The position numbers were made by a program, and so were the translations under genes. This document shows positions 24,376 to 62,448 of a stretch of DNA of 64,000 bases, piece by piece. Origin of the DNA: Penicillus capitatus (Eukaryota; Plantae; Chlorophyta). A model generated the notes under the pieces. The model was not told the DNA's origin. It did not search any database and was given only the letters and a program-made list of their open reading frames with translations. The stretch is taken from positions 51,101 to 115,100 of the forward strand of contig OZ287701.1 in the NCBI GenBank assembly GCA_965649825.1, written 5' to 3'. Position 1 is the stretch's first letter, and the number at the start of each line of letters is the position of its first letter.

Positions 24376-24991
24376 CTAGACATGCTCGACCTTGTCTCGC
24401 AGAACGACGGGGTTCTCTTCTTTGAGCTTCATTCTTTCGGCAGCTTTTCGATCGAATGGACATTCGTGCTCTTGTGGATAACGATGCGCTTGACAGAATT
24501 GGCCTCCGCAACGACAGGAGAAGGCCATTAATCCCACACGTTTCGTACACTTGGAACAGCGTGTTGGGCGTGGTCGCTTCGCCGGACTTGCCACAACCGC
24601 ATCTGTATCTGTTATGGCAGGAACAGCAACAGACACACGTCACATCATTTTCATGACTCCACTCCCAAATGGCATGCATGTCTTACTGGTTTGAGGTGGC
24701 GGTGGTGGTTCTGTTGACGAGGTCGTCGGAAGGGGATGGACAGGAATGGGTGGCGAGAACTCTTGCGCCGGCTTGACCTCTTCAGCTTCTGTCGATGGCG
24801 CCGTCTGTCTCGAGAGAAAGTGCTTAAAACAGATGGAACACATACCATTGCACTCAGGATTTCTGCCACGTGACCGTCCAACAGAGCCATGATACAAATG
24901 CAGCTTACGCGAAGAAACCACAGTTGTTGGAACAGAGCGTCGGCGCCGGAGGCGATTCGCAACGGTCTTGTGTTTCGCTTGGATGACTCAT
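24376..24991 (-). CDS. A20/AN1 zinc-finger stress-associated protein
   Basis: A20 finger LCSNNCGFFA|NPECNGMCSICFK and AN1 finger RCSKCTKRVGLMAFSCRCGGQFCQAHRYPQEHECPFD. Confidence 0.92.
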
Positions 24992-25158
24992 CCCTTCAAA
25001 CGACGACGATGTGCGCTACTGGGAGGATAGGGATGGAATAGCAGCTGGTAGAGGTCGACTATAAACAGCCGCGGCGAAATCGGAGCGCTTTACGGCAATG
25101 CGAAAATGACGTCATACCATACGCGTTGTTTCATCCATCTGCCTTCGCTGTCATCGCC

Positions 25159-26783
25159 ATGCAATCCTCCGACAAAGCGCGGCCCAAAATCCTCCTGGGC
25201 CTGACGGGCAGTGTTGCCACAATCCGAGCGTCGATGCTCGTGCGTCACCTCTCCGACTTCGCCGACGTCCAAGTAACACGCGTGCACGTCTGAGGGGCGG
25301 CGACATGGCCATCGATATCTAGGTTGTTGCCACGCAGCCTGCTTTTCATTTCTTCGACAAGGACGAGATTCCACAGGACGTTCAGATCTGGAACGATGCC
25401 GATGAGTATGGGAAATGGAAGCGCAAGGGTGATGACGTCCTTCACATTGTTCTGCGTCGCTGGGCGGATCTGTTGCTCATTGCACCGCTTTCTGCCAATA
25501 CCCTGGCCAAAATGGCCAACGGTTTCTGCGATAACCTGCTCACGTGTATCGTGCGTGCATGGAATCCAGATAGGCCCCTCTGTGTGGCACCCTCCATGAA
25601 TACCCTCATGTGGAACCATCCGCTCACCCAAGACCACCTCAACACCCTGCGCCGCCGTTCCATGCACGTGATCGATCCCATACCCAAGCTCCTGGCGTGT
25701 GGGGATCAAGGAATGGGTGCTATGGCTGAGGTACCAGATATCGTTCGCATCGTCCAAAACGTCTTGTCACACAGTGACGCAGTGCCGCGCGTGATGGGGA
25801 GTTCGCAGACGAGTGCAGACTACTATGCAGACTCCTACGCGCATTTCGGCATTCACGAGGAGATGCTGAAGGACCGCATTCGAACGAATGCCTACCGTCA
25901 AGCCATTCTCAACAACCGTCACCTCTTTGAAGGAAAAGTCATCCTGGACGTCGGATGCGGCACCGGTATCCTCTCGCTTTTTGCTGCCAAAGCAGGAGCA
26001 GCACATGTCTATGGTGTCGACTTCTCCGAAATCGCCCACCAGGCGCAACGCATCGTCGAGGAGAATGGTATGGGGGATAGAGTGACAATCATTAAGGGTA
26101 AAGTGGAAGAGGTGACGTTGCCAGTAGACGCCGTCGACGTTATCGTGTCGGAATGGATGGGATACTTCCTCTTCTACGAGAGCATGCTGGATACGGTCAT
26201 CTACGCTCGGGATAAATGGCTCCGTCCAGATGGCATCTTGTTGCCCGATAAGGCCGCCCTTTATGTCTGCGCCCTAGAGGACGGCGATTACAAGCACGAG
26301 AAGATCGATTTCTGGACAAATGTGTATGGGTTTGATATGTCTTGTATCAGAGAGATGGCTATTATGGAGCCTCTCGTGGAGTATGTGGATGCCAAGCAGA
26401 TCAACACCGATGCATGTAAGTTGATCGAAGTGGATTTGAAGACGGTGAACGTGAAGGATGTGGATTTCAATGCGCCTTTTGAGGTCAAGGCTTATCGCAA
26501 TGATTATATTCATGGTTTGGTGGCATACTTCGAGGTGTTTTTTACCAAGTGCCATAAGCCTGTGGTGATTTCGACCTCGCCCAAGTGCACGACGACGCAC
26601 TGGAAGCAGACACTCTTTTACTTTGAAGATACGATTTTGGTGTGCACTGGAGAGAAGCTGACGGGACAGCTGTCATGTCAGCGCAATGACAAGAATAAGA
26701 GAGATCTGGATGTGACGGTTGAGTATTCCTTGAAGGGCATTCGAGGCGAATGGCAACGCCAACAGCACTATAGAATTCGTTAG
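25159..26783 (+). CDS. Fusion protein: phosphopantothenoylcysteine decarboxylase (HAL3/PPCDC flavoprotein) + type I protein arginine methyltransferase (PRMT1-like), 524 aa
   Basis: Exon 25159-25272 plus exon 25323-26783. ILLGLTGSVAT, HIVLRRWADLLLIAPLSANTLAK, APSMNTLMW and LACGDQGMGAM run in frame into SADYYADSYAHFGIHEEMLKD, VILDVGCGTGILS, SEWMGYFLFYESML and TTHWKQT. Confidence 0.9.
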
Positions 26784-26812
26784 TCGAGACGAAAGCACCA
26801 TTTTTGTAAGGC

Positions 26813-29800
26813 ATGCCGATGGCTAGGGGCATTGCGAAGAGATCCAGTGGGTCAGTCACATCATCGCGGTTCGACGCGACCGACGGCGCACGTCATGCGC
26901 TGACCAATGTCGGAAAAAAGAACAAGGCCATTCACGGCGCTCTCTGGACAACGACGTCGATCGACGGAAACGGCAACAATAGCGACGTAGGCGTGGAATG
27001 CGATCTGGCCGATGCGCAACGTCTCATGTCGCCTATACGTCGACAGAAGCCCTCCACGATGTTTGACCCTCCTTTGCGTTTCCAGCGTCGACATGTGAAG
27101 GGGTAAGGGCTTAGAGAGAGGCGTGGTTTGGATCTGGCGTGTATGACGATGCCACGGCGTTTCTGTCTGCAGCTGTTTCGAACAGCTGTGTCATGCCTCT
27201 CGGCCTCTGTCGTACAAACGGATTGCCTCTCTGTTTTCACGAACACGATGTGGCATATAACGATCCTGCCAAGACTGTGTCGAATTGTGAGAGAGATTCG
27301 GCCGATTACGGCACGTTCGACGACGAGAGACATCGCTGCGTCGGTGCGCCTAGGATCCTGGCCATACCACTGGACCTTCACGAAAAGCGATCTCCTCGCA
27401 GCGACCAGTGGAACGCGTCCATTTGCAAATCTCGCAGAGACGAAGAAAGAAAAGCCTCAGCCGCGATCGGCGAAGGAAAAGAAGGAAATGCCGCGATCGG
27501 CGAAACCCGAGCGTCGAAAACCTATCCAGACGTTTTCCGAACTGGAATCTCGATTCCGAGAGCTGCCAAGAAAGTTGTCCATTGATCAGTGGAAGGAGAT
27601 GTTTTCCCATCTCTCGCGTCTCGCGTCTCCCGAAGAGCCCGAAGCCCATCGGCTGTTGCATCAGTTGATGGTATCGCTATTGAGAGGCACAGCAGGTGAC
27701 AGAGATCTGAGGTCTCTGACGAAAGCCCTCCTGCTCATGCACTACAAGGGCTGGACGAACATGACGATCATGGAGCAGATGTGTGATCTCTTTCTTTCAT
27801 CAGTGGATTTTGGATCGATCGTGACACCCTCGCTCACCGAGTACATTGCTGCGTTGGGAGAAATCTACAAAGGTCGCGGGATTCCCTTGCACAGTCACAT
27901 CGTCGACCCCGCCGCATCATCGACCGCACGTCACATCAGATCCTCCCTCGAAATTATACTGAACCGTGTTTTGGAACTGTTGCAGAAAAAGACCCAGAGA
28001 CACCGAACCATGCTGAGACGGCATATGGTCTCTCCACTGAGGCCCTTCTCGAAAACGAAGTCGAAGGCGACACCACAGAGCAGCCTTTTTCGTCTAAATC
28101 AGAATCTGAGTTTGGAGACAGGTACAGAAAGCTCTGTGATGTGACAGCCACTTTCATGAGATGTACTGCTTCTTCCAGCAGCAGGAAAGCCAGGAGAAGG
28201 TTGAACATGTTCAAGCCTGTCCGCTTCCAAAAAGACAAATGGTACATTCGAAGAGGTCTCGATCCAAAGTAACCGCATTCCTGATCCCAGACCTTGTCCG
28301 TCGTCTTCTGATGCATGATGTGATTCAGAAATCCTGGCCGTTATATTCGCGTCCCGCATTCAGAGATGGAGCATCTCAAGAGGAAACACTATGCACCCGT
28401 TCCTTTCGATGCACCCAGTGGCGAAGATCTCTCTTCCGAATTGGAAGACTACAAGACGCACGTCGTTGTCAACAAGCTGACAGGGGCGAAACGCACACGC
28501 CTCGTTTTTGACCAAGATCTCGACGAAATGCAATTCTTCTACGATACCTATCTCGACAGAGATGCCTCTCGAGCTCAAATACCAGATCTAGGTGTGTCAC
28601 CGTATATGGATCGTATACCCAATGACGAGCTGCTGTCTCAGATGTGGACGAAGAACTGGTCGAGCTTCCATCGCCAAAGGACAGGGAGATCGCTAAAGGT
28701 CCCATCAATGCACACATCCAGCTGTGCCGAGTGCTCGGTACTCTTTGCTATGCCTCTGTATGGATGGACCATCTGTGTGGCAGGTTCAGAAATTATTTCG
28801 ACAGCTCGTCGACGTCACATCCATGTCATGAATGTTGTCTCGCTCATCTGTGGACTGTGCCACATGCGTTACCGAAGAGACCTTGTCTTCCAGACCCTAC
28901 TGACGCGGCTCAGATCCCATACCATGGCAGAGAAGCTCACGCAGAGAGATCTGACGAATATCGTCTTTGGCTTGGGTTCGGTCCGTTATAGAGACGTTGT
29001 AACGTACACACGCATCTGCACACAGTTTCTGCTTCCCCCAAGGCTGGAAAAATGCACAAGTGGTAAATAGGACGCTCGTTGTCGTCTGCCTGTACAGAGG
29101 AGGTGCTTTGGTGTAGAGGAGATGGTGAAGTTTGTCTCCGGTTTGGCATTGGCCGGCTTCTGTGATCAACAGGCCATGACAACAGCCGCAGAGAAACTGC
29201 GATCAAAGAGTGAGAGTCTCACGATCCGACAGGCAATCGCCTTGTTTGGTGCCTTTGCCCGTTGCAACATCCGCGAGACGGTTTTCATGCATCAACTGAT
29301 TGCCCACATCACCCGTATGCCCAAGTGCCATACACGCAGATTCCGATGCAGAGATCTCTACAGGAAAATGGTCGAACAGCACGGATGCCGCGTCTGTGGT
29401 GGAATTGCTGCAAGGGATTTCACAAGCGAGGCTTGCGCAGAACGCAACGATGGTTTCGTTCAGAGAACGCATGATGGAGATGTTTGCCGACGAGGCATGC
29501 GTTTCGCGTTTCTCCTCTGAAGAGATCTGTCAGATCTGGAAGCTCTTGGGAAATCTCCAATGGATTGACGAACGCGTGGCGTCGTCTCTGTTGCTCCCAC
29601 TCACCCAGGCAACAACTCTCCAACGTGAGCACACACACACTTCTCTCGTCAATACTCTCCATATGACGATTTCAGAGATAACGCTACAAGGGATAGTGGA
29701 TCTTCTCTATGGACTGGCCCGTTCTCCACACGACATCCCTGACTCTCAGCTGTCTCCTGTGTACCAAGAGGCGATCCGTATGTCGCATATGTGGGTGGCC

Positions 29801-30653
29801 GTTTTATCAGATGATGGTTTTCAGGTAGCGATCGGCTCAAGAGATATGATCATTGGCAGCTCTCATCGTTGGCGCTCAGTCTGAGTATGGGACAGTGTCA
29901 AGAAGCGTATCTCTCTATACCAAATGCCTCAGAGATGCAAGGGTGTGTGAGACAGGGATGTGCTGAAGGCATTGTGGTCTGAGGTCTGCTCTGGTGTACG
30001 CAGCAGTCGTTATAAGACAGAACATTTCGTCGATATTCTCGAAGCTGCATCGCGTACCGTTGTCCCCCCAACGGAACAGCAACTGCAGAACCTGGCCACG
30101 CCACTTGTCACACCGTTGCAGATGATCCGCACCAAGATGCCGCAGTTTGTCTCCATACTGGACAGCCTCTCCCGCATTCCACACCAAGACAAGTCCACCA
30201 AAATAATCTCCCGGATAGGTGGCTCAAACGCTTGATGATAGGATGACTGCTGCGAGATTGGTCAAAGAATTCGTTCGGCCTAAGCGGTTGACTGAGATCA
30301 ACGCCGCCGCCATTCCGAGTGTACGGTCACACTTTGCATCATCCTGTGATGATGTGACGTGGTGATGGGCAGGTGATGAAATCGCTATTGGCTCTTAACC
30401 ATCCAGAACGCAATAGAATGGAGTTCCTCGCCGACGAGCTCCAACGGGATCAGACCAAGATCACTGCGTGGACAAGAGAAGAACTCACGTTTGGCCGATC
30501 CCTCACTCCTGTCCCATCAAATGCTGTGTGTACAGATTCGTGTATCAGGTCTTGTCGCAGTTGGACTGTCAGAACGCAAAAGTGATGAAGCTGTTGAAGG
30601 CAGAGGTCGAATTTCAGTCAAGCGCTTACTCCAATGCTCTGCCAAGTCCATAA
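26813..30653 (+). CDS. Large helical-repeat protein, probably organellar RNA-binding (OPR/RAP/FASTK-like); start uncertain (26813, 27027 or 27144)
   Basis: Many small-intron-separated exons with repeats such as LTQRDLTNIVFGLGSV, LTIRQAIALFGAFAR, ITLQGIVDLLYGLAR. No diagnostic RAP motif confirmed. Confidence 0.55.
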
Positions 30654-31133
30654 GTTCATAAAGGTCACTCACATCGAGCAAATCAATCTATTCCTTCTGA
30701 TTTGCACAAACGAAAAAGCGGACTCATTGCGGTCCGGCAAGCCAATAGGCTCAGAGAATCGAAACGCGATTCCCAATTGAATGAAAACAGACCATCAAGC
30801 CGATCCTTCATGGCTAGATCGGTACACGGTGGGACGGACGACCAACTGTTGTAAAGGATACTGCACACTTGACTGACAAGAACACTGGAGATTTGGATAG
30901 CTTAGCAAAAAGTCTTAGAAGCCTTCGACTCACGAATCATCATGCTTGACTTCACTTCAAACGGTTTCTGCACACACCATACCTACTGACTAAGTGGATA
31001 GAGGGTGAACGCACACACACCTTTGGGGACTTCATATAGTAAGCACACATGTCTTTCTCAATTGGATGCAGCATATCATCTTTCTGGATCATTTTGGTGG
31101 TGTTGAAGCAGACCTAGACACATACCCTTGTCG

Positions 31134-32214
31134 TTAGGAGACGGTTATTGAGAGATCGGCTATTGCCTCCATCATTTCATCATGCCCGTTCGGTTCTCCG
31201 TGTGAGAGAGACAACTTGTAAGCGAGGTTCTTTGGATTTCCAGGCATAGCTGGCGTACACGCTTCAATGAGAGCACCATCCGATCCGCTGATGATAAAAT
31301 CTTCGGGTTTGATGTCGACGAATTCATCGAATGGATGGTTGAAAACGATCATGAGTTCTGCGCCCTTCTTGTCCGTATAAGGCATTCCTTTGTCTCCGTC
31401 GACGCCCATACCCAAAGCAATGACGTCAAGATCCCTACAGTACGTTCATCGCAAATAGATGCCTAACCGTAGCACATTCTTACAGGCAGTGTGCACGATC
31501 TTTGGGTAACAAAGCCCGGCAACCCTTCCTGTAAGGAAGATCTACATAGCCCGTTTCCTATACCGCATCCACATGTCATGCCCTCATACGTTATGCGTCT
31601 GGCATACCGCAGCAATGGCGTCACGGTCAAGCTCAACACAGGCTCCCATTGGGATACATTTGTCGTCGCAGTTCGTCTCAACAAAAAAGTCAAGGATCAT
31701 CTGGCACTTGTCATCGGAGACGGTCACTCCGAGGATGGCACCTATATACTCCCACGCATCTCACGAAGAGATCGACCACGGCATCGAGCATGACCTGGTA
31801 GGTTCGTAACTTTGAAAAAGCTGGGCTTCACATCGATGCTAATTTTGGTCGACGTATAAACGATAGCTCTGCCGTAGAGGGTGCCCAGTGGACGATTGAG
31901 CAGCTCGGGGAAGCTCGCTTTCTGCTCTTCCAAGGGCTTCTTGCTGAGATGCGTCACCTACGAAGGCCATCTCAATGCGGTCACGAGGCAGGCCAGGACA
32001 CACCTCGAACTGTAGGTCTTTCTGGAAGTGGGTTGGGCCACTGTAGTTGGGGCAGTACTCCTTTTCTTCACCCAACAGGTCTCGGCCCTAAACATCATGC
32101 GTCGTGTGCACGAACGAACATATCGCGAAGCTGTCTGCGTCGGCCGAGGACGAGCGTCGCCCGGCACATAGCGCTAAGCGTCGTCGATGCGTACCATGAT
32201 ACGGTCGGAACCAT
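31134..32214 (-). CDS. Hypothetical multi-exon, Cys-containing, possibly secreted protein
   Basis: Coding-like exons separated by GT-AG introns (GRDLLGEEKEYCPNY..., VETNCDDKCIPMGACVELD..., IVFNHPFDEFVDIKPEDF). No family recognised; boundaries approximate. Confidence 0.5.
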
Positions 32215-33034
32215 GGACCATGAGGCAATAGGCGAGAAGCAAAAAGAGCGTCTTCATTCTAAGAGTCTTCGCACGAAGCAGCGACGTGGTCACGACGGGG
32301 AAAGGGACGATGGGGCTTCGCAAAGCAACGCTTTCTTTTTAGACAATCGAATCGACAAAAAGCTAAGAACACTCGTTTTTATCGAGCAAACGGATGGCAG
32401 TGTCTTGTAAGTGGTTGAATCTTTATGTTGGGGCGCACGGACGGTTGTACTGGAATTGCTTGATTCCGCTAACGGACGGTGAACAACAAAAGATGCGACC
32501 CCAAATAGGAACGTCGGTTGACGTTGACGAGCCGAGGGCTTAAGAGATTCACAGTACACACGACATGCCGTCACCGAGCCGCGTCCTTAGAAGCCGCGTA
32601 CAACAGACTTGCATCTAAAGGGTATTGATTTTGACATCTCTGCGGACGTTGTTCATATCGACCTTATCGAAAGACACCTCCTGACGCCATTTCGATTCGC
32701 CTCCGTTGCCATGGCGGCTTCCTGATGCGACTCTCGCTCGAATCGTTGACGCCATGACGATCGAGGCATTGGATGTTATGCTTTCTAGTGCTTCGACGGT
32801 CGCACTTTTGTCCCGCAACGAAAAGTGAACGAACTTACCATACTCTCTGTTTCGCCGTCCATCGTTGTTTGCCGATTTCTCGAACGTGGTTACCGAGACG
32901 TCTCTTCTGTGAAAAGACACTCGCCGTACGTAGCTAGCAGCTATGTATACGGTCGATTTCCGACGCGGGTTATCGGTTCAATAGCTTTACCAACACGTTT
33001 TCGAGGCGCATTTATTGTTATTCGTTTTACGAGG

Positions 33035-53612: not shown

Positions 53613-56582
53613 TCATGTTTGTCCCTGATCGATCTTGTGCAGAATGCGAGAAAGCGTTTCCTGCATTGTTCGCATTTGACCTTTCAACGCGGCGTCGTTA
53701 AACTCCGTCTGCAGTTCTCGCTCGACTGTCTTCTCGATGTCACGGATTCTTCCCTCCCGCGTATCGCTTTTCTCTCTTCCCGTCTTTTCGGCGGGGACCA
53801 AATAGTGGAAGTACTTGCCGCCGGCTCGCTGACGGATCTTGCTTTTGTAAAAGCAGGATCTGAAGAATGACGCTATCGCCGACATCAGCCCCGATATTGC
53901 TCCCCATCCAAAGCAGGCCCTGCACACAAGAAAAGGTGTGCACGGAGTGGACGCGACTGGCGGTGTTGACCGGTGCTCTTCTCTTGATGCTGCGCCGCGA
54001 TACGAGACAAAGGAGAGGACATCTCCCGCTATGGTAGCACGACGCCTGGTCAACTCGGCTTCCTCGTTGAGCTTGACTCGATCGTAGACATCGACCAGAA
54101 TCGGGACGAAAAGGTTCATCATGACGATTCCGCCGAATAAAACAAAGAAACTGATAAAGAGCAGCTTCATTAAGCCGACGATCCCTTCCGTCGAACCGAA
54201 TTCCTTCATCGCATACAGCACCTAGAACGGCGAGGATAGCACACAAGATGAGCTTACGTCGTCGTCGATGTTCCCGAAGCAAGCCTGGTACAGTGTCTCT
54301 ATCTGACGCATAAATGTATTGTCACTGAAATCGCCAGCGTTGTCGTCCGCATTGTGGAGTTCCGGCACGGTCAGGATTCGCAGTGCACAGGCGAATCCGC
54401 AGGCGAAGGTCAGACAGATAAAGGCCAGGTATGCGAACGATCGAAGCGAGTGACCGAGCATCGAAATGAAAGGGCCACGGTTCTTGAAGAGCATCAATGG
54501 TTGCATCACCTACAGAACAAACGCACAAACAGTGTGAGTACGTCGAGCGACGCTGTGTGCAATGATGCGCACTATGACAGTGCAGAGGATGCACTCAATG
54601 GACACCAGGATGCCAGAGAGCTGCGTGACGTCTTCCGATGTATGAGAATCGGGGATGAGATACGACAGGATTGCAATGCTTAGAAGGCTAAACATTCAGC
54701 AGCACAGCAATGCATCCATGCTTTCTCCTGTAATGTACTGACGTACTTGATTCTTGAATGTTGGGTGCTGCCTCCGACCACGTGAACGCCCAGCAGAGAA
54801 CACATGACGAAAACGAAAAAGGGCTTGAAGTCAGATAAGTCGCTATCGCGATCCAGGCTTTCAAAAATCTGAGAATGGAGAAAAAACAGCGCAGTGAAGA
54901 AGCCATTGACGGCGGCAAACACTCCGAAACGCCAAGCGACCGATCGAAACACCCAGGAGGTGAAGATTCGCAGAGAATCCGAATTGAAGACATCAACCGG
55001 AAGATCGGACTGCTGGGCGAGAGTGCAGAGGAAGTGGTGCCCGCCACGGCGCTCGCTCGTACGCGATGCGACGTCGACGGTCGCATCGGATGAGCTGTGG
55101 CGGACGGCGTGCTGGTGAACGCATGAGAACTTGGCCACGGCTTCGACGCGAACTCCGGATCCGGATGCGTCGACAAACTTCTCTCGATACTCCTCGCAGT
55201 TCCTCGACCAGAGCTCCCTCACCGCCTTGCCTTCCAGCGGCGTCCAGTCGGTCAATTCCTCGTCCGTCGTCATTGCGATCGGACAGTCAGGATCGCTGAA
55301 CAGCGAGGGAGACGCCCACACCCTGCCGTACTCGAAGCAGAAGGCGTCTCTCTCCAAGTAGTCTCGCATGAGACTGGGGAATCTCTGTGACAATGGGAGC
55401 AGGTAGTTTGTCAGAATGCTGCAGGAAGGATACCTGGGTCTTCCGCGCTTCTGATCAAGAATTCCCTGATCATTGAGAGATGAAGTGTTTATGGACACCG
55501 TCGCCTTGTGCTCGAAGGACGACATAATGGCGCCGTTCTTTGTTGAGTGATCAAGTGATTTGTCGGAGGCAGATAGCCCGTTCCTTATATCGAACCTCCT
55601 CATTTTGGTTTATCCGTCTCATCGTTGGTGCAAGGAAACCATGTCATCCACTTCCCTTGGTGGAGAGAGTCTCTCTTTCTGCATCTCTGATGACACCTGT
55701 TTCGAGTCCTTCTTTCGTGGTGTTGTTTGTATCTAAAGCATGCATTGTTGCCATTACCATATCCGTCTGCATCTGTGCTTTGCTGCTGTTCTATGCGTTT
55801 GTTCGTTTTCTGAGATACGGCTGCTAAGTACCTGGAGTCTGTGCTTGATCGCGTAGGAGTGAAGCACTTCAGATGTGGTTGCACTTCGCTCATCCTCAGG
55901 GTGCACGCTTTTCGTTTACCTGCCAGCCTCACATGCAGCGCTATTGCTCGCGCGTTGCGTTGCAAGGGTAACACTACCAAGGCGAATTCGGCTGAGAACT
56001 GATTTTATCTCCTGTCTTTCTGATTTTCTGCGATACTGACGAGCAAGGAGAGAAGCAAGGGATCTTCGGTTCAGACACACAGTATTTGTGCCACGCTGTC
56101 AGCTGAGTCGGTCAGTCTGTGGAATTTCGGGACAATAGTGAGAACCTTAGCAAACATGCAAGAGGAGCATCTGTGGAAATGACTGGGCCTTTGAGGTGCA
56201 GCAGTGAGAGTGAAACATTATACGACGGTTTCTGCCAACCGTTAAAGTGCGCAGGACGAAGCTCATCATTCTCGACTCCGTTCTCTCAGATGTAGCGCAT
56301 CTGTCGGCACAGACACCGCATGTTCTCGATTTACAGTCAATGGAGCTGCTGGCAGATGGACAGCACATCTGGACTCAACAGCAAGCCTTGTTGCATCATC
56401 AGAACGCCGAATGCCATCGACAGCACCACCGCCGTCAACACGTGAGACCTCTTCTGTTGTCTCTCACTTACCTGGACGATCTCCATTTTCAAACATACTT
56501 TTGGGCGATCAGGTGTCTTCCGTCCTATCTGTGCTATGTCTGTTTTTGTTCTCTGCACTACGGAGCTGCTCGTGCGCTTCAT
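53613..56582 (-). CDS. TRP-like six-transmembrane cation channel; 5' part approximate
   Basis: S5-pore RGPFISMLGHSLRSFAYLAFICLTFACGFACALRIL...TLYQACFG, and S6/TRP-box-like IVMMNLFVPILVDVYDRVKLNEEAELTRRRATI. Confidence 0.72.
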
Positions 56583-56723: not shown

Positions 56724-59700
56724 ATGCGGCGCCCTCTTTCTCGTCTACGACTCTGCTTTCTGTGTGCTTTTCTTGCACAAGGAGGTGGAATACTACGCGC
56801 AGTCCAAAGCGCCTCACTGCGCCCGTCAGATGTCGGGTCTACGAGCGGCGGTACGTTACCGTCGACATCGTCGCGACTTTATGGTCTTGCGGGTTTGGTT
56901 CTCTAGACCACACGGTCAGGAAACAGCTTCCCACCTTCGCTGCAACACGTCCAAACTTCTTGACGAAACACGTCGAAAATGTACTCCTCGAACATGCCTC
57001 GCGTCGAGGGCATTAACAACTTTTTCGCTTGTAGACGGTAAACGAAGCACGGTCCCTGCAGTCTGGCGCGTCTGTCCATGAGAACGCGGCAGGTCAGGCC
57101 TCCTTTATCTGCCGTGTACATCGCTGGAGCCGAGAGGTTTCTGCCGTGCTGTAGGTTACAATTGTGACGTGACAAGTGAAACCAGAGATCGATACATATC
57201 ACGTGACGGTCAGACATGGCTCATTACCGACGCCGTCCTTGAAGAAATCGGCAACGACTTGCAGAAAATTGTTAACTGCACCAATGAGGGCGATGTAATC
57301 CTCTTCGATGTGACCGAGGTCGTCCAACCAGTTTCGCTGGTCATTATTCCGTGGCGTCTGACGCTCTCCTCACACATTGTTGAGTCTCACTCCAACGGCG
57401 ACGACTCTTCGAGTTCAAGGGCAAGGACAAGATTCACGTGTCCTCGGACGAACGCCGGCCTCTTTCTTGTGCGGTAAGGCCGCATCAAAGGAAAACGTCA
57501 CCTCACTCTCCCACTGTAGAGCCAAAAGCGTCACGTTCACTGATCTCGTATTTGAGGGGTGCACCATCGAAGGCACAGATGAAGTCCGGTCGATCGTCGA
57601 AGTCTCGCAATGTGGAGATCAAAACAGCGCAGGGCTCGTGGCTCTGCACCGCGTTACGCTACGCAAGAATACACTGATCTCAGCTTCAGGGATTCGTATG
57701 TCCGCGTCGTCGGGTTCTGAATTGGAGATGATTGACGTTGAGATCGCGGACAACATCTGCTCGGGCGACGGGTGTGGAGTCCTCCTTGCAAACAAGAGCA
57801 GTTTAAACAACTGCACTGTGTCCCGAAACAGAGTCGCAGAATCTGACGAGCAACAGTCATCAATACTATATGCTCTGGCGTCATCCAATACCACGATGAA
57901 CGGATTCGTGGCCAACAAAAACGATCTCACTGTCCTCCGAGTTCAAGACGCCGTCATTTTTTTGTCGAATGCGGCCTTCAATCGGAATTCCCTGGAAAAG
58001 AAAACAGCCAAAAATACGAAGACCTCCTGTGTCCATTTACTCGAGTCGTTAGCCGCAATGCACAGATGGGCTTTCACTTCTAATGAAGTCGTCGACGGGT
58101 CCGTCGTTTTCGCCGAATGGTCGAACATCTCTATGCTTGATTCGGCTTTCCAGAAGAACGTCGCCGTCAGCAACGGTAGTTGTCTTTACTCGAAAAACTC
58201 CAAAGTGACGCTGGTGAACGTCACGGCGATCAAGAACAGCGCGAGGTCCCGTGGCGGATTCATGTACGTAGAGAGCTCGAACGTGACGCTGGAGAACGCC
58301 ACGGCGATCAAGAACAGGGCGTATTTTTTTGGCGGATTCATGTACGTAGAGAGCTCGAACGTGACGCTGGAGAACGCCACGGCGATCAACAACAGCGCGT
58401 ATTTCTTTGGCGAATTCATGAGAGTAGAGAGCTCGAACGTGAAGATGAAGAACGCCACGGCGATCAACAACGGTGCATGGAATGGCGGATTCATGAGAGT
58501 AGAGAGCTCGAACGTGAGGCTAGAAAATGCCATGGCGACCAATAACAGCGCGGGTTTTAGTGGCGGATTCATGCACGCACGTAGCTCGAACGTGAAGATG
58601 AAGAACGTCACGGCGATCAAGAACAACGCTTGGGACGAAGGCGGATTCATGCACGCTGCGAGCTCGAACGTGACGCTGGAGAACGCCACGGCGATCAACA
58701 ACAGCGTTAAGTACGATGGCGGATTCATGAACGTAGAGAGCTCGCACGTGACGCTGGAGAACGTCACGGCGATCAAGAACAGCGTGGATTCCACTGGCGG
58801 ATTCATGAGAGTAGAGAGCTCGAACGTGAAGATGAAGAACGCCACGGCGATCAACAACAGTGCACTGAATGGAGGATTCGTGCACGTAGAGAGCTCGAAC
58901 GTGACGCTGGAGAACGCCACGGCGATCAACAACAGCGCGAGGTCCCGTGGCGGATTCATGAGAGTAGAGAGCTCGAACATGACGCTGGAGAACGCCACGG
59001 CGATCAAGAACAGTGCATCGAATGGCGGATTCGTGCACGTAGAGAACTCCAAAGTGACGCTGGAGAACGCCACGGCGATCAACAACAGTGCATGGATTGG
59101 CGGATTCATTTACGCAGAGAGATCGAACGTGACGCTGGAGAACGCCACGGCGATCAAGAACAGCGCGGATTCCAGTGGCGGATTCATGTACGCAGAGAAA
59201 TCAGAGGTTCGGCTAAGTCATACAGTTGCAGCATCCAACGGCGCTCGAGATGTCGGCGGATTCATGTCTGCGATAGATTCCACAGTGACCATGGATCACG
59301 CGAATGCAACTAGTAACACTGCGCGCAATGGGGGATTTATGTCCGCAAAGCAGTCAAGTGCGACGTTGGAGCATACGAACGCGGTCAGCAACACCGCAGA
59401 AGACGGCGGCGGGTTCATTTACTCAGAACAATCAACAATATCCGTGGTGGACATGAAAGCGACGAACGGCAGTTCTAAATATGGCGGCTTAATCTTTGCT
59501 CGGAATTCCACCCAAAGAGTTGCACAGTCGCAGTGGTACTCGAGCATGTCGACGGCCGCTGGCGGGTTTGCAGCGGCAACGAATAGAAGCTCGATCTTCA
59601 TAAACGACTCCACTCTTGTTGAAGGAAAGTCCAAAGACGGCGGAGCGATCTGGTTGAAGAACTCTCGCTTAGCAGCTCGCAATCTGTCCATAGCTCACTG

Positions 59701-62448
59701 TGAGGCCGACGATGGTGGTGGCGTGATGGGCATCGATTTTTCAACCTTCCTTTGTGCCGACTGCGCACTTCACAACAACACGGCGAAAGAAAGAAACGGC
59801 GGTGGAGTCTTCATCGATGTCGACCGCGAGCAGACTCTGACTTTGCAGTTCATTCGAAGCACCTTCACGAACAACGTCGCCAAGCTGGGAGGTAAGCGCT
59901 TTTTTCGCGTGGATAAAACAATACTAACAATCACTTGTAGGTGGACTCGTCTTCCTGTCAACTAAGAGTAATGAAGAATACACGACAAACGGCACCGGCT
60001 ATCCCTTCATGGTCCTGGCGGATACGCAATTTTCGGGCAATGAAGCAAGAGTTGCGGGAGGAGGCGTTTTCGCTGCCTACTCGGAAGCTATCCGCTTTCG
60101 TTGCTCTGATGTTCCGCCAGATGAAGGTTTGGAGTTTTACTCAGAGAAGGAGTGGAGAGCCTTGAGTCTGCTCAAATCTGCCGATGACATCTGCCCGTCT
60201 TGGAAGCACAATCGCGGGAAAAAGAGTGGACCCGATGTCGGGACATATGCCGTAGCTGCACGAATGACCGTGGAAGACGCGAATAGATCCGTTTATGAGA
60301 GTGGCGAGGAGTGGGTGATAGAGGGATATCGCGCTGGCGAAGACCTGCCTACAATGGAGGTGGAGCTTATAGATGGTCTGAATCAGAGACCTGCAACATT
60401 CCACCGCCCAGTCAGTGCCAACTTGTCTTCGTCATCTGCTCAATTCCTTGTTGGATCGATCGTCATCCCTATTGATCCCGGGAATTGTGCTTTTCGATCC
60501 ATCAACAGCTTCGTCCCTCCAGGAGAATACAGGCTGGGTATCCATTTTGGCGAGAAGTTGATCGGGAGCATCGGGATCACTGTGAAAGTCCGAAACTGCT
60601 CAGTCGGCGAAAGCGTGTCGACTGGAGAGCTTTGCACGGACTGCAGCAGCACGACATTCAACTTCAAACTCTCAGCCAACTATTGCCTGCCGTGCCCGGA
60701 GAATGGCGACTGCACTTCTCGGGTGGTCACGCCAAATGAAGGCTACTGGCATCAGATGCCGTGCTCCGTCCACTTGCACAGATGCCTTCCAGCCTCCGCC
60801 TGCGAATCCGAAGATCGATCCAAGAAGCTGACAGATGCAGTCAGCAATGTCACGAGCTGCGATTTCGATGAAGCGTGGATCGAGGACTACACACAGGCTC
60901 AGTGTGCGGAGGTAAGCCACACAGTGGCTTGACTCTTCAGAAATCCGAATTCTCTGATTCGTTCTGCAAGGGTAACGGCGGGCCGCTCTGCGGATCGTGC
61001 TTGAATGGTTTCGGCTCTGGCCTGTCCTCGGAGTGCAGAGAGTGCCTGAAGGGGTTCTTCAATACGATCTACATTCTCATGTCGGCTCTCTTTCTCTTGG
61101 GACTGACTGCCATCACGATCCACGGCACACTCAGCGCTCTGCGAGGAAACGCGCGGCAGATTCCAAGTCAGGGCGAGCCCTCGTCTTCGTCAGTGGGAGC
61201 GAGAGACTCTCCACTCCTCGAACAAGAAGTGGGCGCAGGATGCTTATTGTTGCACCACCCAAATCGTGCGTTTTAGGGTCAGGCGGATGACGGAGTGCCT
61301 GCGTCTGAGAAAGTCCTTGCCAAGTGGAGGGCTGTCGAAATGTTCAAGGTCTAAGCCAAACCTACTGTCTTTGTCTCACTTCATCTTTTTGCAGATCACT
61401 TTGAGCTACACCCAGGTTACTGTCCTGCTAGCTTCCCTTGAAGTTGGATGGGCTTTTTCTTTGATCGTCATGGCGGGAGTAGCAGGTGAGTCTAGAGTCC
61501 TCTCCGTGTCGCCTCTTGCCGACTGCTTTGCTGTTGCCAGAGTTTCTTGGCGGTCTCGCATCGGATGGCATTCGACGCTCTGTCGTGTGTCTGAGCTCGG
61601 AGCACCTGTTCTTGCACCCAACAGCCCTGGCACTTGTCGTTAACACATGCATCGTACCGTGTGCCGTGCTTCTCTTCTGGATCGTGTTCTGGGCGATGAA
61701 ATCGAAAAAGTCAGCGGACGACGGGCTTCAACGCTACCTGGCGAAGAGATGTATGTTGTCGCTCATGGTCATCTGGTACGTCACTCTCGTACCTGTGTTG
61801 AAGACCGCGTTGAGCGTCTTCCTCTGTGTCGACGTGCACGACTCGATGGACTTGGATAAGGTCGACGCGACGCACAAGTACTGGGCCGTCGACACGGCCC
61901 TCGAATGCTATCAAGGCGACCATTCGATACTCGTCTACGCCGTTGTCGTCTCTTTCGTGGGTCCAGTTTACGGCGGACTGCTCGTTCTCTTCGGTGCCTT
62001 CCTCGGAGTTTCGGTCAACCACCTTACCGACAAGCAAAGCTGGGGATACCAGACGACGGGATTCCTTTATCGCTCGTACAAGCTGGATCGTTGTCGTTAC
62101 TGGGAAGTCGCCATCATCGCGAGGAAGGCCGCCATCGCCTTTCTCGTGTTCTGCGCTCATCTCTTCGACAGCGCAGTGCCGATCACTGGCGTCGCGTGTA
62201 TCATCACACTCGCCATTGCGGCGCAGATTCTGGTGCTGCCTTACCGACATCTCTTTCAAGATCTCAATAGAATCGAAGTGGCATCCCTGCTCGTGTCGCT
62301 GATGACGACGTTGATCGCTTCAATGCTCAAGGACGAGAACTATCCGGAAAACTACACCCGCGACCTGCTCACGGTCGCGTGTCTTTTGCTGAACATCATC
62401 ACCTTTTCTGTTTTCGTATTCTACATTCTCAAGTTCACAGCCGAGTAA
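56724..62448 (+). CDS. Large cell-surface protein: signal peptide, polymorphic-membrane-protein-like beta-helix repeats, Cys-rich region and multi-pass TM C-terminus
   Basis: Signal peptide MRRPLSRLRLCFLCAFLAQG; GG(F/A) plus N-x-A repeats; CLPCPENGDC...GYWH...C Cys-rich module; GPLCGSC; several TM helices with YWEVAIIARK. Exons joined by GT-AG introns. Confidence 0.8.
58206..59190 (+). repeat. Intragenic tandem repeat: ~13 near-identical 69-72-nt (23-24-aa) units
   Basis: Unit VTLENATAIKNSAxxxGGFMxVESSN; DNA-level near identity, e.g. GTGACGCTGGAGAACGCCACGGCGATCAA recurs many times. Confidence 0.95.

What the first reader, a model, noticed from the sequence alone, without database searches (positions are those of the whole stretch)
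25159..26783. In-frame fusion of the CoA-biosynthesis decarboxylase PPCDC/HAL3 with PRMT1
Seen in sequence: a complete HAL3/PPCDC flavoprotein, with the His in HIVLRRWAD, the PxMNxxMW motif and the catalytic Cys in LACGD, runs through a short linker (VLSHSDAVPRVMGSSQT) into a complete type I PRMT with motif I, double-E loop and THW loop intact. There is no stop or intron at the junction; both lie inside one 1461-nt exon. An in-frame ATG at 25794 could start PRMT alone. Established knowledge: these are normally separate proteins; PPCDC is trimeric and PRMT1 dimeric or oligomeric; Hal3 proteins moonlight, and S. pombe Hal3 is fused to thymidylate synthase. Inference: either a bifunctional enzyme linking CoA synthesis to arginine methylation, or a former bicistronic pair that lost its stop codon.
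Basis: partly seen in the sequence, partly recalled or inferred. Interest (0 to 1): 0.78.

Follow-up and report, generated by a model that had tools for sequence, protein, structure and literature searches.

The report
Conserved PPCDC–PRMT1 gene fusion in siphonous algae
A siphonous green alga makes a coenzyme-A-pathway enzyme (PPCDC) and the main protein arginine methyltransferase (PRMT1) as one 524-residue protein, and in Caulerpa-like relatives the same two genes sit 16 bases apart in different reading frames, so fused and split forms of one locus can be compared directly.

Summary
A two-exon gene (25159-25272 and 25323-26783, with a 50-nt GT..AG intron) encodes 524 residues. These form a complete PPCDC/HAL3 flavoprotein domain, a linker of about 20 residues, and a complete PRMT1.

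The fusion is not an assembly artefact:
- The same continuous reading frame, with the same intron position, occurs in a sister species (88% nt identity, dS 0.41).
- It also occurs in a distant relative (71% aa identity, synonymous sites saturated).
- Both domains are under equally strong purifying selection (omega about 0.035), and all catalytic residues are present.

The nearest unfused PRMT1 sequences come from Caulerpa and Ostreobium, so the window is from a bryopsidalean green alga. In two Caulerpa-like contigs the same genes lie in the same order and synteny. There PPCDC ends in TAA, and the PRMT1 ATG follows 16 nt later in another frame. The window's internal ATG at 25794 is homologous to that true PRMT1 start codon.

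The direction of change (pair to fusion, or fusion to pair) is unresolved. I found no other PPCDC-PRMT fusion in the best 150 of 1.84 billion representative proteins, in 80 metagenome PRMT1 loci, or in the literature. A functional link between CoA synthesis and arginine methylation is not supported by any evidence here. This is a new, lineage-restricted domain architecture of moderate interest.

The parts
25107..25114 (+). TGACGTCA palindrome 52 nt upstream of the start codon; candidate promoter element
   Evidence: It is a single occurrence in about 2 kb. It is also present at -49 in L002 and -15 in L001, and absent in the Caulerpa-like loci. Its function is inferred only.
25159..25272 (+). 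Exon 1: residues 1-38, the start of the PPCDC Rossmann fold (GLTGSVA at 25198-25218)
   Evidence: An exon of homologous position and length is present in L001, L002, L004, L005 and L006.
25273..25322 (+). Intron, 50 nt, GT..AG, phase 0 after codon 38 (..DVQ|VV..)
   Evidence: The same position carries GT..AG in all five related loci, with lengths of 42-51 nt. An unspliced reading hits a stop.
25323..26783 (+). Exon 2, 1461 nt: the rest of PPCDC, the linker, all of PRMT1, and the TAG stop
   Evidence: It is identical in the second assembly, L003.
25186..25757 (+). PPCDC/HAL3 flavoprotein domain, residues 10-183 (spans the intron). Key residues: His79 at 25443-25445, PSMNTLMW at 25590-25613, Cys164 at 25698-25700
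   Evidence: Pfam PF02441 E 6.5e-31. Gapless alignment to AtHAL3a 1e20 and human PPCDC 1qzu. Catalytic residues checked. Omega 0.036 against L002.
25758..25817 (+). Linker, residues 184-203 (..NVLSHSDAVPRVMGSSQTS..)
   Evidence: It is variable (omega 0.42) and 5 codons shorter in L001, but always in frame. GCCGCGCGTG (25784-25793) aligns with the first 10 nt (GCCACGAGTG) of the 16-nt inter-ORF spacer of L005.
25794..25796 (+). Internal in-frame ATG (Met196), homologous to the true PRMT1 start codon of the Caulerpa-like relatives
   Evidence: Alignments. The Met is kept in all three fused lineages although the linker is otherwise poorly conserved. Its use as a start is not tested.
25818..26780 (+). 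PRMT1 (type I arginine methyltransferase), residues 204-524. Motif I at 25938-25967, double-E loop at 26148-26189, THW loop at 26595-26612
   Evidence: Pfam PRMT_C E 9e-61 plus methyltransferase core families. Gapless alignment to human PRMT1 6nt2, E 7e-129. Omega 0.034 against L002.
26805..26809 (+). TGTAA, the usual green-algal polyadenylation signal, 22 nt after the stop
   Evidence: A TGTAA lies at the equivalent place in L002. There is none near the PPCDC/PRMT1 junction (25750-25830); the only TGTAA inside the gene, at 26415, lies within the PRMT1 part. The role of TGTAA as the poly(A) signal rests on general knowledge of green algae.
24376..24921 (-). Divergently oriented neighbour: zf-AN1 / A20-type zinc-finger gene, shown here as a synteny marker
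   Evidence: Pfam zf-AN1 E 4.4e-11. The same neighbour lies upstream of PPCDC in L001, L005 and L006.

Best explanation
This is a genuine, evolutionarily maintained gene fusion in a clade of bryopsidalean (siphonous) green algae.

**Product.** One promoter and one two-exon mRNA give a 524-residue cytosolic polypeptide. Its N-terminal half is a catalytically competent FMN-dependent phosphopantothenoylcysteine decarboxylase, the third step of CoA synthesis. Its C-terminal half is a catalytically competent PRMT1. The two are joined by a flexible linker of 12-20 residues.

**Origin.** The fusion belongs to a locus state shared with Caulerpa. In the ancestor of both lineages, PPCDC and PRMT1 already lay head to tail next to a zf-AN1 gene. 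The fused and split forms differ only by a frame-changing indel just after the last PPCDC helix, plus small in-frame indels.

**Shown versus inferred.** The following are shown: the fused reading frame, its conservation, the selection on both halves, the intact motifs, and the split state in Caulerpa-like contigs. The following are inferred: that both halves are active in the fused protein; that the fusion is a tolerated, probably near-neutral consequence of tight co-expression rather than a metabolic coupling; and that a PRMT1-only product may also be made from the conserved internal Met196 via an internal transcription start (about 35-40% likely).
For: - **Gene model and domains:**
- **Same fused ORF and intron position elsewhere:** L003 (same species, gene identical), L002/L004 (88% nt identity, dS 0.41) and L001 (71% aa identity, dS saturated).
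- **Selection (Nei-Gojobori omega):** 0.036 for PPCDC, 0.034 for PRMT1, 0.42 for the linker. The linker indel is 15 nt, which keeps the frame.
- **Composition:** GC3 is the same in both halves, 0.66 and 0.62.
- **No separate PPCDC mRNA end:** there is no stop codon and no TGTAA at the junction, so any PPCDC-containing product must continue into PRMT1.
- **Split state in the Caulerpa-like loci L005 and L006:** same order, same intron position, same zf-AN1 neighbour; PPCDC ends in TAA, and the PRMT1 ATG follows 16 nt later in a different frame. Both ORFs are under purifying selection, omega 0.05 and 0.026.
- **Homologous junction:** the window's GCCGCGCGTG-ATG aligns with GCCACGAGTG, the first 10 nt of the L005 spacer, which ends 6 nt before the PRMT1 ATG. 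The Caulerpa DNA read one nucleotide later gives SNADRFKPRVFRM, against the window's SHSDAVPRVM.
- **Unfused outgroups:** the Ostreobium PRMT1 gene models carry their own N-terminal extensions, and a transcript-like contig (L009, closest to Ostreobium at 74%) has its own 5' leader and start codon with no PPCDC.
Against: - No transcript or protein data could be reached, so translation of the full 524-residue product is inferred from conservation.
- I could not check whether the genome also holds standalone PPCDC or PRMT1 copies. Only this 64-kb window is held, and it has no second copy.
- PPCDC is a trimer with active sites at subunit interfaces, and PRMT1 needs dimerisation. A 12-20-residue tether might strain one of these assemblies, and that was not modelled.
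- The 3' part of the PPCDC region shows no dip in divergence that would mark an embedded promoter for a PRMT1-only transcript.
- There are 14 AUGs upstream of Met196, which makes leaky scanning to it unlikely.
Confidence: 0.8

Rival explanations
1. The fusion is adaptive and bifunctional. Either the PPCDC trimer acts as a scaffold that organises PRMT1 dimers into a defined higher oligomer (for example a 3x2 hexamer like yeast Hmt1), or CoA-pathway flux and arginine methylation are regulated together.
For: The fused state has been kept across saturated synonymous divergence with both halves intact. The linker is short, 12-20 residues, which would hold the two oligomeric cores close together. 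Hal3-type proteins have precedents for moonlighting and for fusion to another enzyme (PMC9604783). Yeast Hmt1 crystallises as six chains (1g6q).
Against: The sister Caulerpa lineage runs the same two genes as separate proteins under equally strong constraint. No other lineage shows the fusion among the best 150 of 1.84 billion representatives or among 80 metagenome PRMT1 loci. The linker evolves fast (omega 0.42) and varies in length. No biochemical connection between the two reactions is known.
Confidence: 0.12
2. The locus is effectively a two-product gene. The main PRMT1 protein is made on its own from Met196 (ATG 25794), from an internal transcription start. The long fused protein is only the form in which PPCDC happens to be made.
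For: Met196 is homologous to the real PRMT1 start in Caulerpa-like relatives. There PRMT1 has no upstream intergenic region of its own, so it must be expressed either from a transcript starting inside or upstream of PPCDC, or from a bicistronic mRNA. The Met is one of very few linker residues conserved in all fused lineages.
Against: There is no conserved non-coding signal upstream of 25794. There are 14 upstream AUGs in the full mRNA. No expression data are available. This rival is compatible with the best explanation and adds to it rather than replacing it.
Confidence: 0.37
3. The fusion is an assembly or sequencing artefact: a missed stop codon or a 1-nt indel at the junction in this assembly. 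The organism would then really have the Caulerpa-type split pair.
For: The split and fused states differ by a single frame offset, so a 1-nt error could in principle convert one into the other.
Against: The same open frame is present in a second assembly of the same species (gene identical). It is also present in two haplotype-like contigs of a sister species at 162x and 174x coverage and in an unrelated short-read assembly of a distant relative. Each of these has its own substitutions and an in-frame 15-nt linker indel.
Confidence: 0.02
4. One half is a decaying or repurposed domain, for example a PPCDC domain that acts only as a regulatory or moonlighting Hal3-like module, or a PRMT pseudoenzyme. 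The true enzyme would be encoded elsewhere.
For: Yeast Hal3 and Vhs3 are PPCDC-derived proteins that lack the catalytic Cys and act as regulators (PMC9604783). The rest of the genome could not be searched.
Against: His79, Asn131, Met134 and Cys164 are all present, as are motif I, the double-E loop and the THW loop. Omega is 0.035 on both halves. Both alignments to the solved enzymes are gapless.
Confidence: 0.04

Closest known systems
Schizosaccharomyces Hal3 (PPCDC domain fused to thymidylate synthase)
   Same: A eukaryotic PPCDC/Hal3 domain sits at the N-terminus of a longer protein whose C-terminal part is an unrelated, complete enzyme. The fusion is restricted to one lineage (PMC9604783).
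   Different: The partner there is thymidylate synthase, not a PRMT. It is a fungal lineage. No split sister state a few nucleotides away has been described, to my knowledge.
Bacterial CoaBC (Dfp) and other PPCDC fusions within the CoA pathway
   Same: The PPCDC flavoprotein domain is at the N-terminus of a bifunctional polypeptide. 6tgv CoaBC matches residues 6-197.
   Different: CoaBC joins consecutive steps of one pathway (PPCS and PPCDC). Here the partner has no known pathway relation.
PRMTs with appended N-terminal modules (PRMT3 zinc finger, PRMT2 SH3, CARM1 N-terminal domain)
   Same: A conserved type I PRMT core tolerates, and is sometimes targeted by, an extra N-terminal domain. The PRMT1 N-terminus is naturally variable (the hits have lengths of 325-550 aa).
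   Different: Those modules are binding domains. Here the added module is a whole oligomeric metabolic enzyme, and the catalytic core is an orthologue of PRMT1 itself (best PDB hit PRMT1 at 7e-129, against PRMT3 at 2e-97).
Nuclear polycistronic (bicistronic) loci of green algae (Gallaher et al. 2021, PMC7896298; the 2025 PNAS leaky-scanning paper, PMC11892635)
   Same: The Caulerpa-like state has two conserved ORFs on one strand, a very short inter-ORF spacer (16 nt), different frames, and no poly(A) signal between them. This looks like such a locus.
   Different: The window itself has no stop codon, so it is a fusion and not a polycistron. In the Caulerpa-like pair, ORF 1 is not depleted of AUGs (10 found against about 9 expected), unlike the leaky-scanning loci described. 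A shared transcript has not been shown.

Membership tests
PPCDC / HAL3 (HFCD flavoprotein family, EC 4.1.1.36) | Flavoprotein (PF02441) domain above the curated threshold | tested here: met
   107.6 bits against a cut-off of 22.7, residues 10-183
PPCDC / HAL3 (HFCD flavoprotein family, EC 4.1.1.36) | Catalytic His (AtHAL3a His90), the PXMNXXMW motif with Asn142 and Met145, and the redox Cys175 | tested here: met
   His79, PSMNTLMW (Asn131, Met134) and Cys164 in a gapless alignment to 1e20. Residue roles are taken from PMC9604783.
PPCDC / HAL3 (HFCD flavoprotein family, EC 4.1.1.36) | FMN binding, homotrimer with active sites at subunit interfaces, and decarboxylase activity | not testable with these tools
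   Needs recombinant protein.
Type I protein arginine methyltransferase, PRMT1 orthologue | SAM-binding motif I (VLDVGxGxG), double-E loop and THW loop | tested here: met
   VILDVGCGTG at 244-253, SEWMGYFLFYESML at 314-327, THWKQT at 463-468
Type I protein arginine methyltransferase, PRMT1 orthologue | C-terminal beta-barrel / oligomerisation subdomain (PRMT_C), full length | tested here: met
   PF22528 E 9e-61, profile positions 1-162 of 164. Gapless to the last residue of human PRMT1.
Type I protein arginine methyltransferase, PRMT1 orthologue | Closer to PRMT1 than to the other PRMT paralogues | tested here: met
   PRMT1 7e-129, PRMT8 1e-125, PRMT3 2e-97, PRMT2 1e-68, PRMT6 4e-64, CARM1 1e-54. 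It groups with green-algal PRMT1 in the tree.
Type I protein arginine methyltransferase, PRMT1 orthologue | Formation of asymmetric dimethylarginine on GAR/histone H4 substrates | not testable with these tools
   Needs an enzyme assay.
Rosetta-stone type gene fusion | The two parts are encoded as separate proteins in other genomes, and both are complete in the fusion | tested here: met
   They are separate in the Caulerpa-like loci, in the Ostreobium models and in all other hits.
Rosetta-stone type gene fusion | The fused mRNA and protein actually exist | not testable with these tools
   No transcript or proteome data were reachable.
Green-algal nuclear polycistronic locus | Two or more ORFs separated by stop codons on one transcript | tested here: not met
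   The window has one continuous ORF with no stop between the domains. Only the Caulerpa-like relatives have the stop plus a 16-nt spacer, and a shared transcript is untested there.
Green-algal nuclear polycistronic locus | Few AUGs in ORF 1 and the spacer (leaky-scanning signature), tested on the Caulerpa-like pair | tested here: not met
   10 AUGs in 589 nt against about 9 expected from shuffles. The criterion comes from PMC11892635.

The most novel reading that the evidence does not exclude
The locus may capture, in living sister lineages, the interconversion between a eukaryotic bicistronic gene pair and a fused bifunctional gene through a single frame-changing indel. On this reading, Caulerpa expresses PPCDC and PRMT1 from one mRNA with a 16-nt spacer, while the window's lineage expresses them as one protein and keeps the old PRMT1 start codon (Met196) as a functional second initiation site. 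That would give a natural test system for how polycistrons, internal initiation and domain fusions evolve into each other in green algae.
Probability: 0.3. Interest if true: 0.65.

Novelty: new variant of a known kind. Interest (0 to 1): 0.5.

Why it matters
Both parts are ordinary housekeeping enzymes, and lineage-specific enzyme fusions are common. The architecture itself is therefore a modest novelty, although I found no report of it.

The comparative setting adds value. One order of giant single-celled algae holds three states of the same locus:
- unfused PRMT1 with its own 5' leader (Ostreobium-like);
- PPCDC and PRMT1 16 nt apart in different frames (Caulerpa-like);
- an in-frame fusion (the window and two further lineages).

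All of these are under strong purifying selection. This makes three questions directly testable with Iso-Seq, 5'-end mapping and proteomics. How is an essential downstream gene expressed with no intergenic region? Do green-algal polycistrons extend to Ulvophyceae, and to long AUG-rich first ORFs? Does a trimeric and a dimeric enzyme tethered by 12-20 residues form new assemblies?

For annotation, it warns that prokaryote-style or naive gene calls split or truncate this gene. The database entries are 486, 477 and 353 aa instead of 524 or 516 aa.

Tried and rejected
- **Structure prediction.** The mixed alignment for AlphaFold (A2) placed all PPCDC-only rows on the PRMT region. I discarded it and ran no model. 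The domain boundaries rest on gapless alignments to solved structures instead.
- **Rfam.** The scan of the window found nothing, so no rRNA or other RNA is available to name the organism.
- **Sample accessions.** A full-text search for the five sample accessions found no paper.
- **PPCDC searches.** A PPCDC-only search and a bryopsidalean PPCDC profile search did not return the Ostreobium PPCDC. Adjacency in that outgroup could therefore not be read from EukProt coordinates. They also failed to re-list the fused proteins, which is a limit of the word index.
- **P0200.** This PPCDC on a long ENA contig came from a different sample (ERZ25073829). It says nothing about a second copy in this genome.
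- **Polarity of the change.** The PRMT1 NJ tree gives 78% bootstrap support for a fused clade. The PPCDC tree gives 4% and nests Caulerpa inside it. Quartet site patterns are about equal for two topologies. I therefore do not claim a direction.
  - The amino-acid resemblance between the Caulerpa +1 frame and the fused linker (S-x-x-D...P-R-V) is only robust for the PRV codons.
  - The rest is at chance level of nucleotide identity (my count from the sequences).
- **Embedded promoter.** Sliding-window divergence between the window and L002 shows no conserved patch upstream of ATG 25794. Codons 136-180 are in fact the most divergent.
- **Programmed +1 frameshifting in Caulerpa.** I considered this as a way to make a fusion there. 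The site (GCA UUA AAG CAA) is not a known slippery or shifty-stop motif (own knowledge), so I rejected it as unsupported.
- **A tiny intron removing the Caulerpa stop.** The only GT..AG pair in the spacer is 8 nt apart, against 42-51 nt for the real intron. I rejected this too.
Full report
**1. The observation**

The region 25159-26783 holds a two-exon gene on the + strand. Exon 1 is 25159-25272 (38 codons). The intron is 25273-25322, 50 nt with GT..AG ends; reading through it meets a stop. Exon 2 is 25323-26783, 1461 nt ending in TAG. The spliced product is 524 residues.

Pfam places a Flavoprotein domain at residues 10-183 (E 6.5e-31), SAM-methyltransferase core families at residues 241-345, and the PRMT oligomerisation subdomain at 347-509 (E 9e-61). 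Against PDB sequences, residues 196-524 align without a gap to residues 43-371 of human PRMT1, that is to its last residue (6nt2, E 7e-129). Residues 7-178 align without a gap to residues 18-189 of Arabidopsis HAL3a (1e20, E 1e-60).

With that alignment, His79, Asn131, Met134 and Cys164 correspond to AtHAL3a His90, Asn142, Met145 and Cys175. A review of Hal3 proteins names these as the residues needed for the two catalytic steps (PMC9604783). PRMT motif I, the double-E loop and the THW loop are intact. The in-frame ATG at 25794 is Met196, inside the linker.

**2. The fusion is real and not an artefact**

The protein search found two database proteins that carry both Pfam domains. Their contigs, and two more, were fetched.

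- L003 (ENA ERZ25074695) is the same species as the window. It is 99.985% identical over 13 kb, the two differences lie at 30991 and 31012, and the gene itself is identical.
- L002 and L004 are two near-identical contigs of another assembly (ERZ26696514, 162x and 174x coverage). They are 88% identical to the window in DNA, including intergenic DNA.
- L001 (Logan SRR33785045) is much more distant: 69% nt and 71% aa identity.

All of them have the same structure: an exon 1 of 35-38 codons, an intron of 42-51 nt at the same codon boundary (..VQ|VV..), and one long exon that runs from PPCDC into PRMT1 without a stop.

Selection was measured with Nei-Gojobori estimates.

- Window against L002: dS is 0.41. 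Omega is 0.036 for the PPCDC part, 0.034 for the PRMT1 part, and 0.42 for the 20-residue linker.
- Window against L001: synonymous sites are saturated, yet the frame is kept. The linker is 5 codons shorter, an in-frame change.

GC3 is alike in the two halves. A missed stop or a 1-nt assembly error cannot explain the same open frame in independent assemblies of three diverged lineages.

**3. The organism**

Apart from those fused proteins, the best PRMT1 matches are a Logan cluster (P0004/P0121) and EukProt proteins of Caulerpa lentillifera (72%) and Ostreobium quekettii (68%). Other green algae follow at about 63%. A neighbour-joining tree puts the window, L002 and L001 with the Caulerpa group (100% bootstrap). 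Ostreobium falls next to them (56%). The window is therefore nuclear DNA of a bryopsidalean (siphonous) green alga. I could not name the species.

**4. The key comparison**

P0004 and P0121 are 90% identical to the C. lentillifera PRMT1. Their contigs, L005 and L006, come from different samples and differ at dS 0.28. They show the same neighbourhood:

- a zf-AN1 gene on the minus strand;
- a two-exon PPCDC with the intron at the same place;
- PRMT1 immediately downstream on the same strand.

There, however, PPCDC ends ..IVYDALKQRGSI-TAA. A 16-nt spacer follows (GCCACGAGTGTTTAGA in L005), and PRMT1 then starts at its own ATG (MADKDSSTSADYY..) in a different reading frame. A stop codon lies 13 codons upstream of that ATG in the PRMT1 frame. 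Both ORFs are under strong purifying selection (omega 0.05 and 0.026).

The window's GCCGCGCGTG-ATG aligns with GCCACGAGTG, the first 10 nt of that spacer, which ends 6 nt before the PRMT1 ATG. Met196 of the window, and the corresponding Met of L001, align with the Caulerpa PRMT1 start. If the Caulerpa DNA is read one nucleotide later after the Leu codon of ..DAL, it gives SNADRFKPRVFRM-ADKD. The window has SHSDAVPRVM-GSSQ after ..NVL. The split and fused states thus differ by a single frame offset plus small in-frame indels. There is no TGTAA poly(A) signal between the two ORFs in any lineage, while the window has one 22 nt after the final stop.

**5. Direction of change**

Outside this group the two genes are separate.

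- The Ostreobium PRMT1 models have their own low-complexity N-termini.
- A transcript-like contig closest to Ostreobium (L009) has a 5' leader of at least 66 nt and its own start, with no PPCDC.
- None of the best 150 of 1.84 billion representative proteins combines the two domains. The two multi-stretch hits are tandem PPCDC repeats.
- None of 80 PRMT1 loci from JGI metagenomes has a PPCDC domain.

Adjacency therefore arose within Bryopsidales. Whether the common ancestor of the Caulerpa group and the fused group had the pair or the fusion is not resolved.

- The PRMT1 tree supports a fused clade (78%).
- The PPCDC tree does not (4%).
- Quartet site patterns are about equal for window+L001 and for L001+Caulerpa.

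In two of the three possible topologies the fusion would be ancestral and the Caulerpa state a secondary split. In the third the question is open.

**6. How it most likely works**

*Shown.* One continuous, conserved coding sequence carries two complete catalytic domains. Any product that contains PPCDC must also contain PRMT1, because there is no stop codon and no poly(A) signal in between.

*Inferred.* The protein is cytosolic, because there is no N-terminal extension before the first beta-strand. It binds FMN and trimerises through the PPCDC half, and it dimerises through the PRMT1 arm. The short linker holds the two oligomeric cores together. Both termini involved are naturally variable and tolerant of additions. 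Examples are PPCDC with a C-terminal thymidylate synthase in Schizosaccharomyces (PMC9604783) and the varied N-terminal extensions of PRMT1 seen.

I consider a tolerated, near-neutral fusion of two tightly co-expressed housekeeping genes the most likely reading. An adaptive coupling of CoA synthesis with arginine methylation has no evidence beyond the fusion itself, and it is weakened by the split state in the sister group.

*Open question: a PRMT1-only product from Met196.*

- For: the Met is homologous to a working start codon, and it is one of the few conserved linker residues. In Caulerpa, PRMT1 has no intergenic region of its own. It must therefore be expressed either from a transcript that starts inside or upstream of PPCDC, or from a bicistronic mRNA.
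- Against: 14 AUGs precede Met196 on the full mRNA, and no conserved patch marks an internal promoter.

**7. Relation to green-algal polycistrons**

The Caulerpa-like pair looks like the nuclear bicistronic loci described in Chlamydomonas, Chromochloris and Auxenochlorella. Those have short inter-ORF distances and frames unrelated to each other (PMC7896298). Those loci are thought to use leaky scanning and show few AUGs upstream of ORF 2 (PMC11892635). Here ORF 1 is 190 codons long and has 10 AUGs against about 9 expected. If the pair is truly bicistronic, it would be an atypical case. If not, PRMT1 is transcribed from within the PPCDC gene. The window itself is not a polycistron.

**8. Novelty and score**

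I found no paper that mentions a PPCDC-PRMT fusion. It is a new domain architecture built from two well-known families, restricted so far to one algal clade. Its fused and split states lie one frame shift apart. I rate it as a new variant of a known kind, of moderate interest (0.5). The evolutionary and gene-expression questions it opens are directly testable.

Noticed in passing
window 25107-25114: There is a TGACGTCA palindrome (CRE-like) 52 nt upstream of the gene's ATG. It is the only copy in about 2 kb. It is also present at -49 in L002 and -15 in L001, but is absent from the Caulerpa-like loci. It is possibly a shared promoter element of the fused lineages.
   Followed up: partly
window 27083-32616 compared with L002/L004, and L001 7434-13434: Synteny breaks just downstream of the gene. 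L001 and the Caulerpa-like loci have a class II aminoacyl-tRNA synthetase, TMEM230 and an aminotransferase IV gene after PRMT1. The window has an unannotated 338-aa ORF (27128-28144) instead. Window/L002 identity drops from 88% to 78% at 27083, with an indel of about 200 nt.
   Followed up: partly
window 24376-24921 (minus strand): A zf-AN1 zinc-finger ORF, plus an adjacent ORF that corresponds to an A20-type finger in L001, is arranged head to head with the fused gene. Only about 170-240 nt lie between them, so the two genes probably share a bidirectional promoter region.
   Followed up: no
database proteins P0001, P0002, P0123, P0124: The public gene calls for this locus are all truncated (486, 477, 486 and 353 aa), because prokaryote-style callers miss exon 1 or start at an internal Met. 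P0124 is the window's own gene called from Met172.
   Followed up: yes
representative-library proteins P0245 (739 aa) and P0281 (385 aa): These proteins consist of four and two tandem PPCDC domains respectively. They are either real tandem-domain proteins or merged gene models of tandem duplicates, apparently from plants.
   Followed up: no
window 57377-59965 (+) and 58186-59109 (-): A long 862-aa ORF has only a weak match to the SV2 luminal (pentapeptide-repeat-like) domain. A 307-aa ORF lies on the opposite strand inside it. Further 307-aa ORFs lie at 54680-55603 and 60009-60932, which suggests a repeated unit.
   Followed up: no
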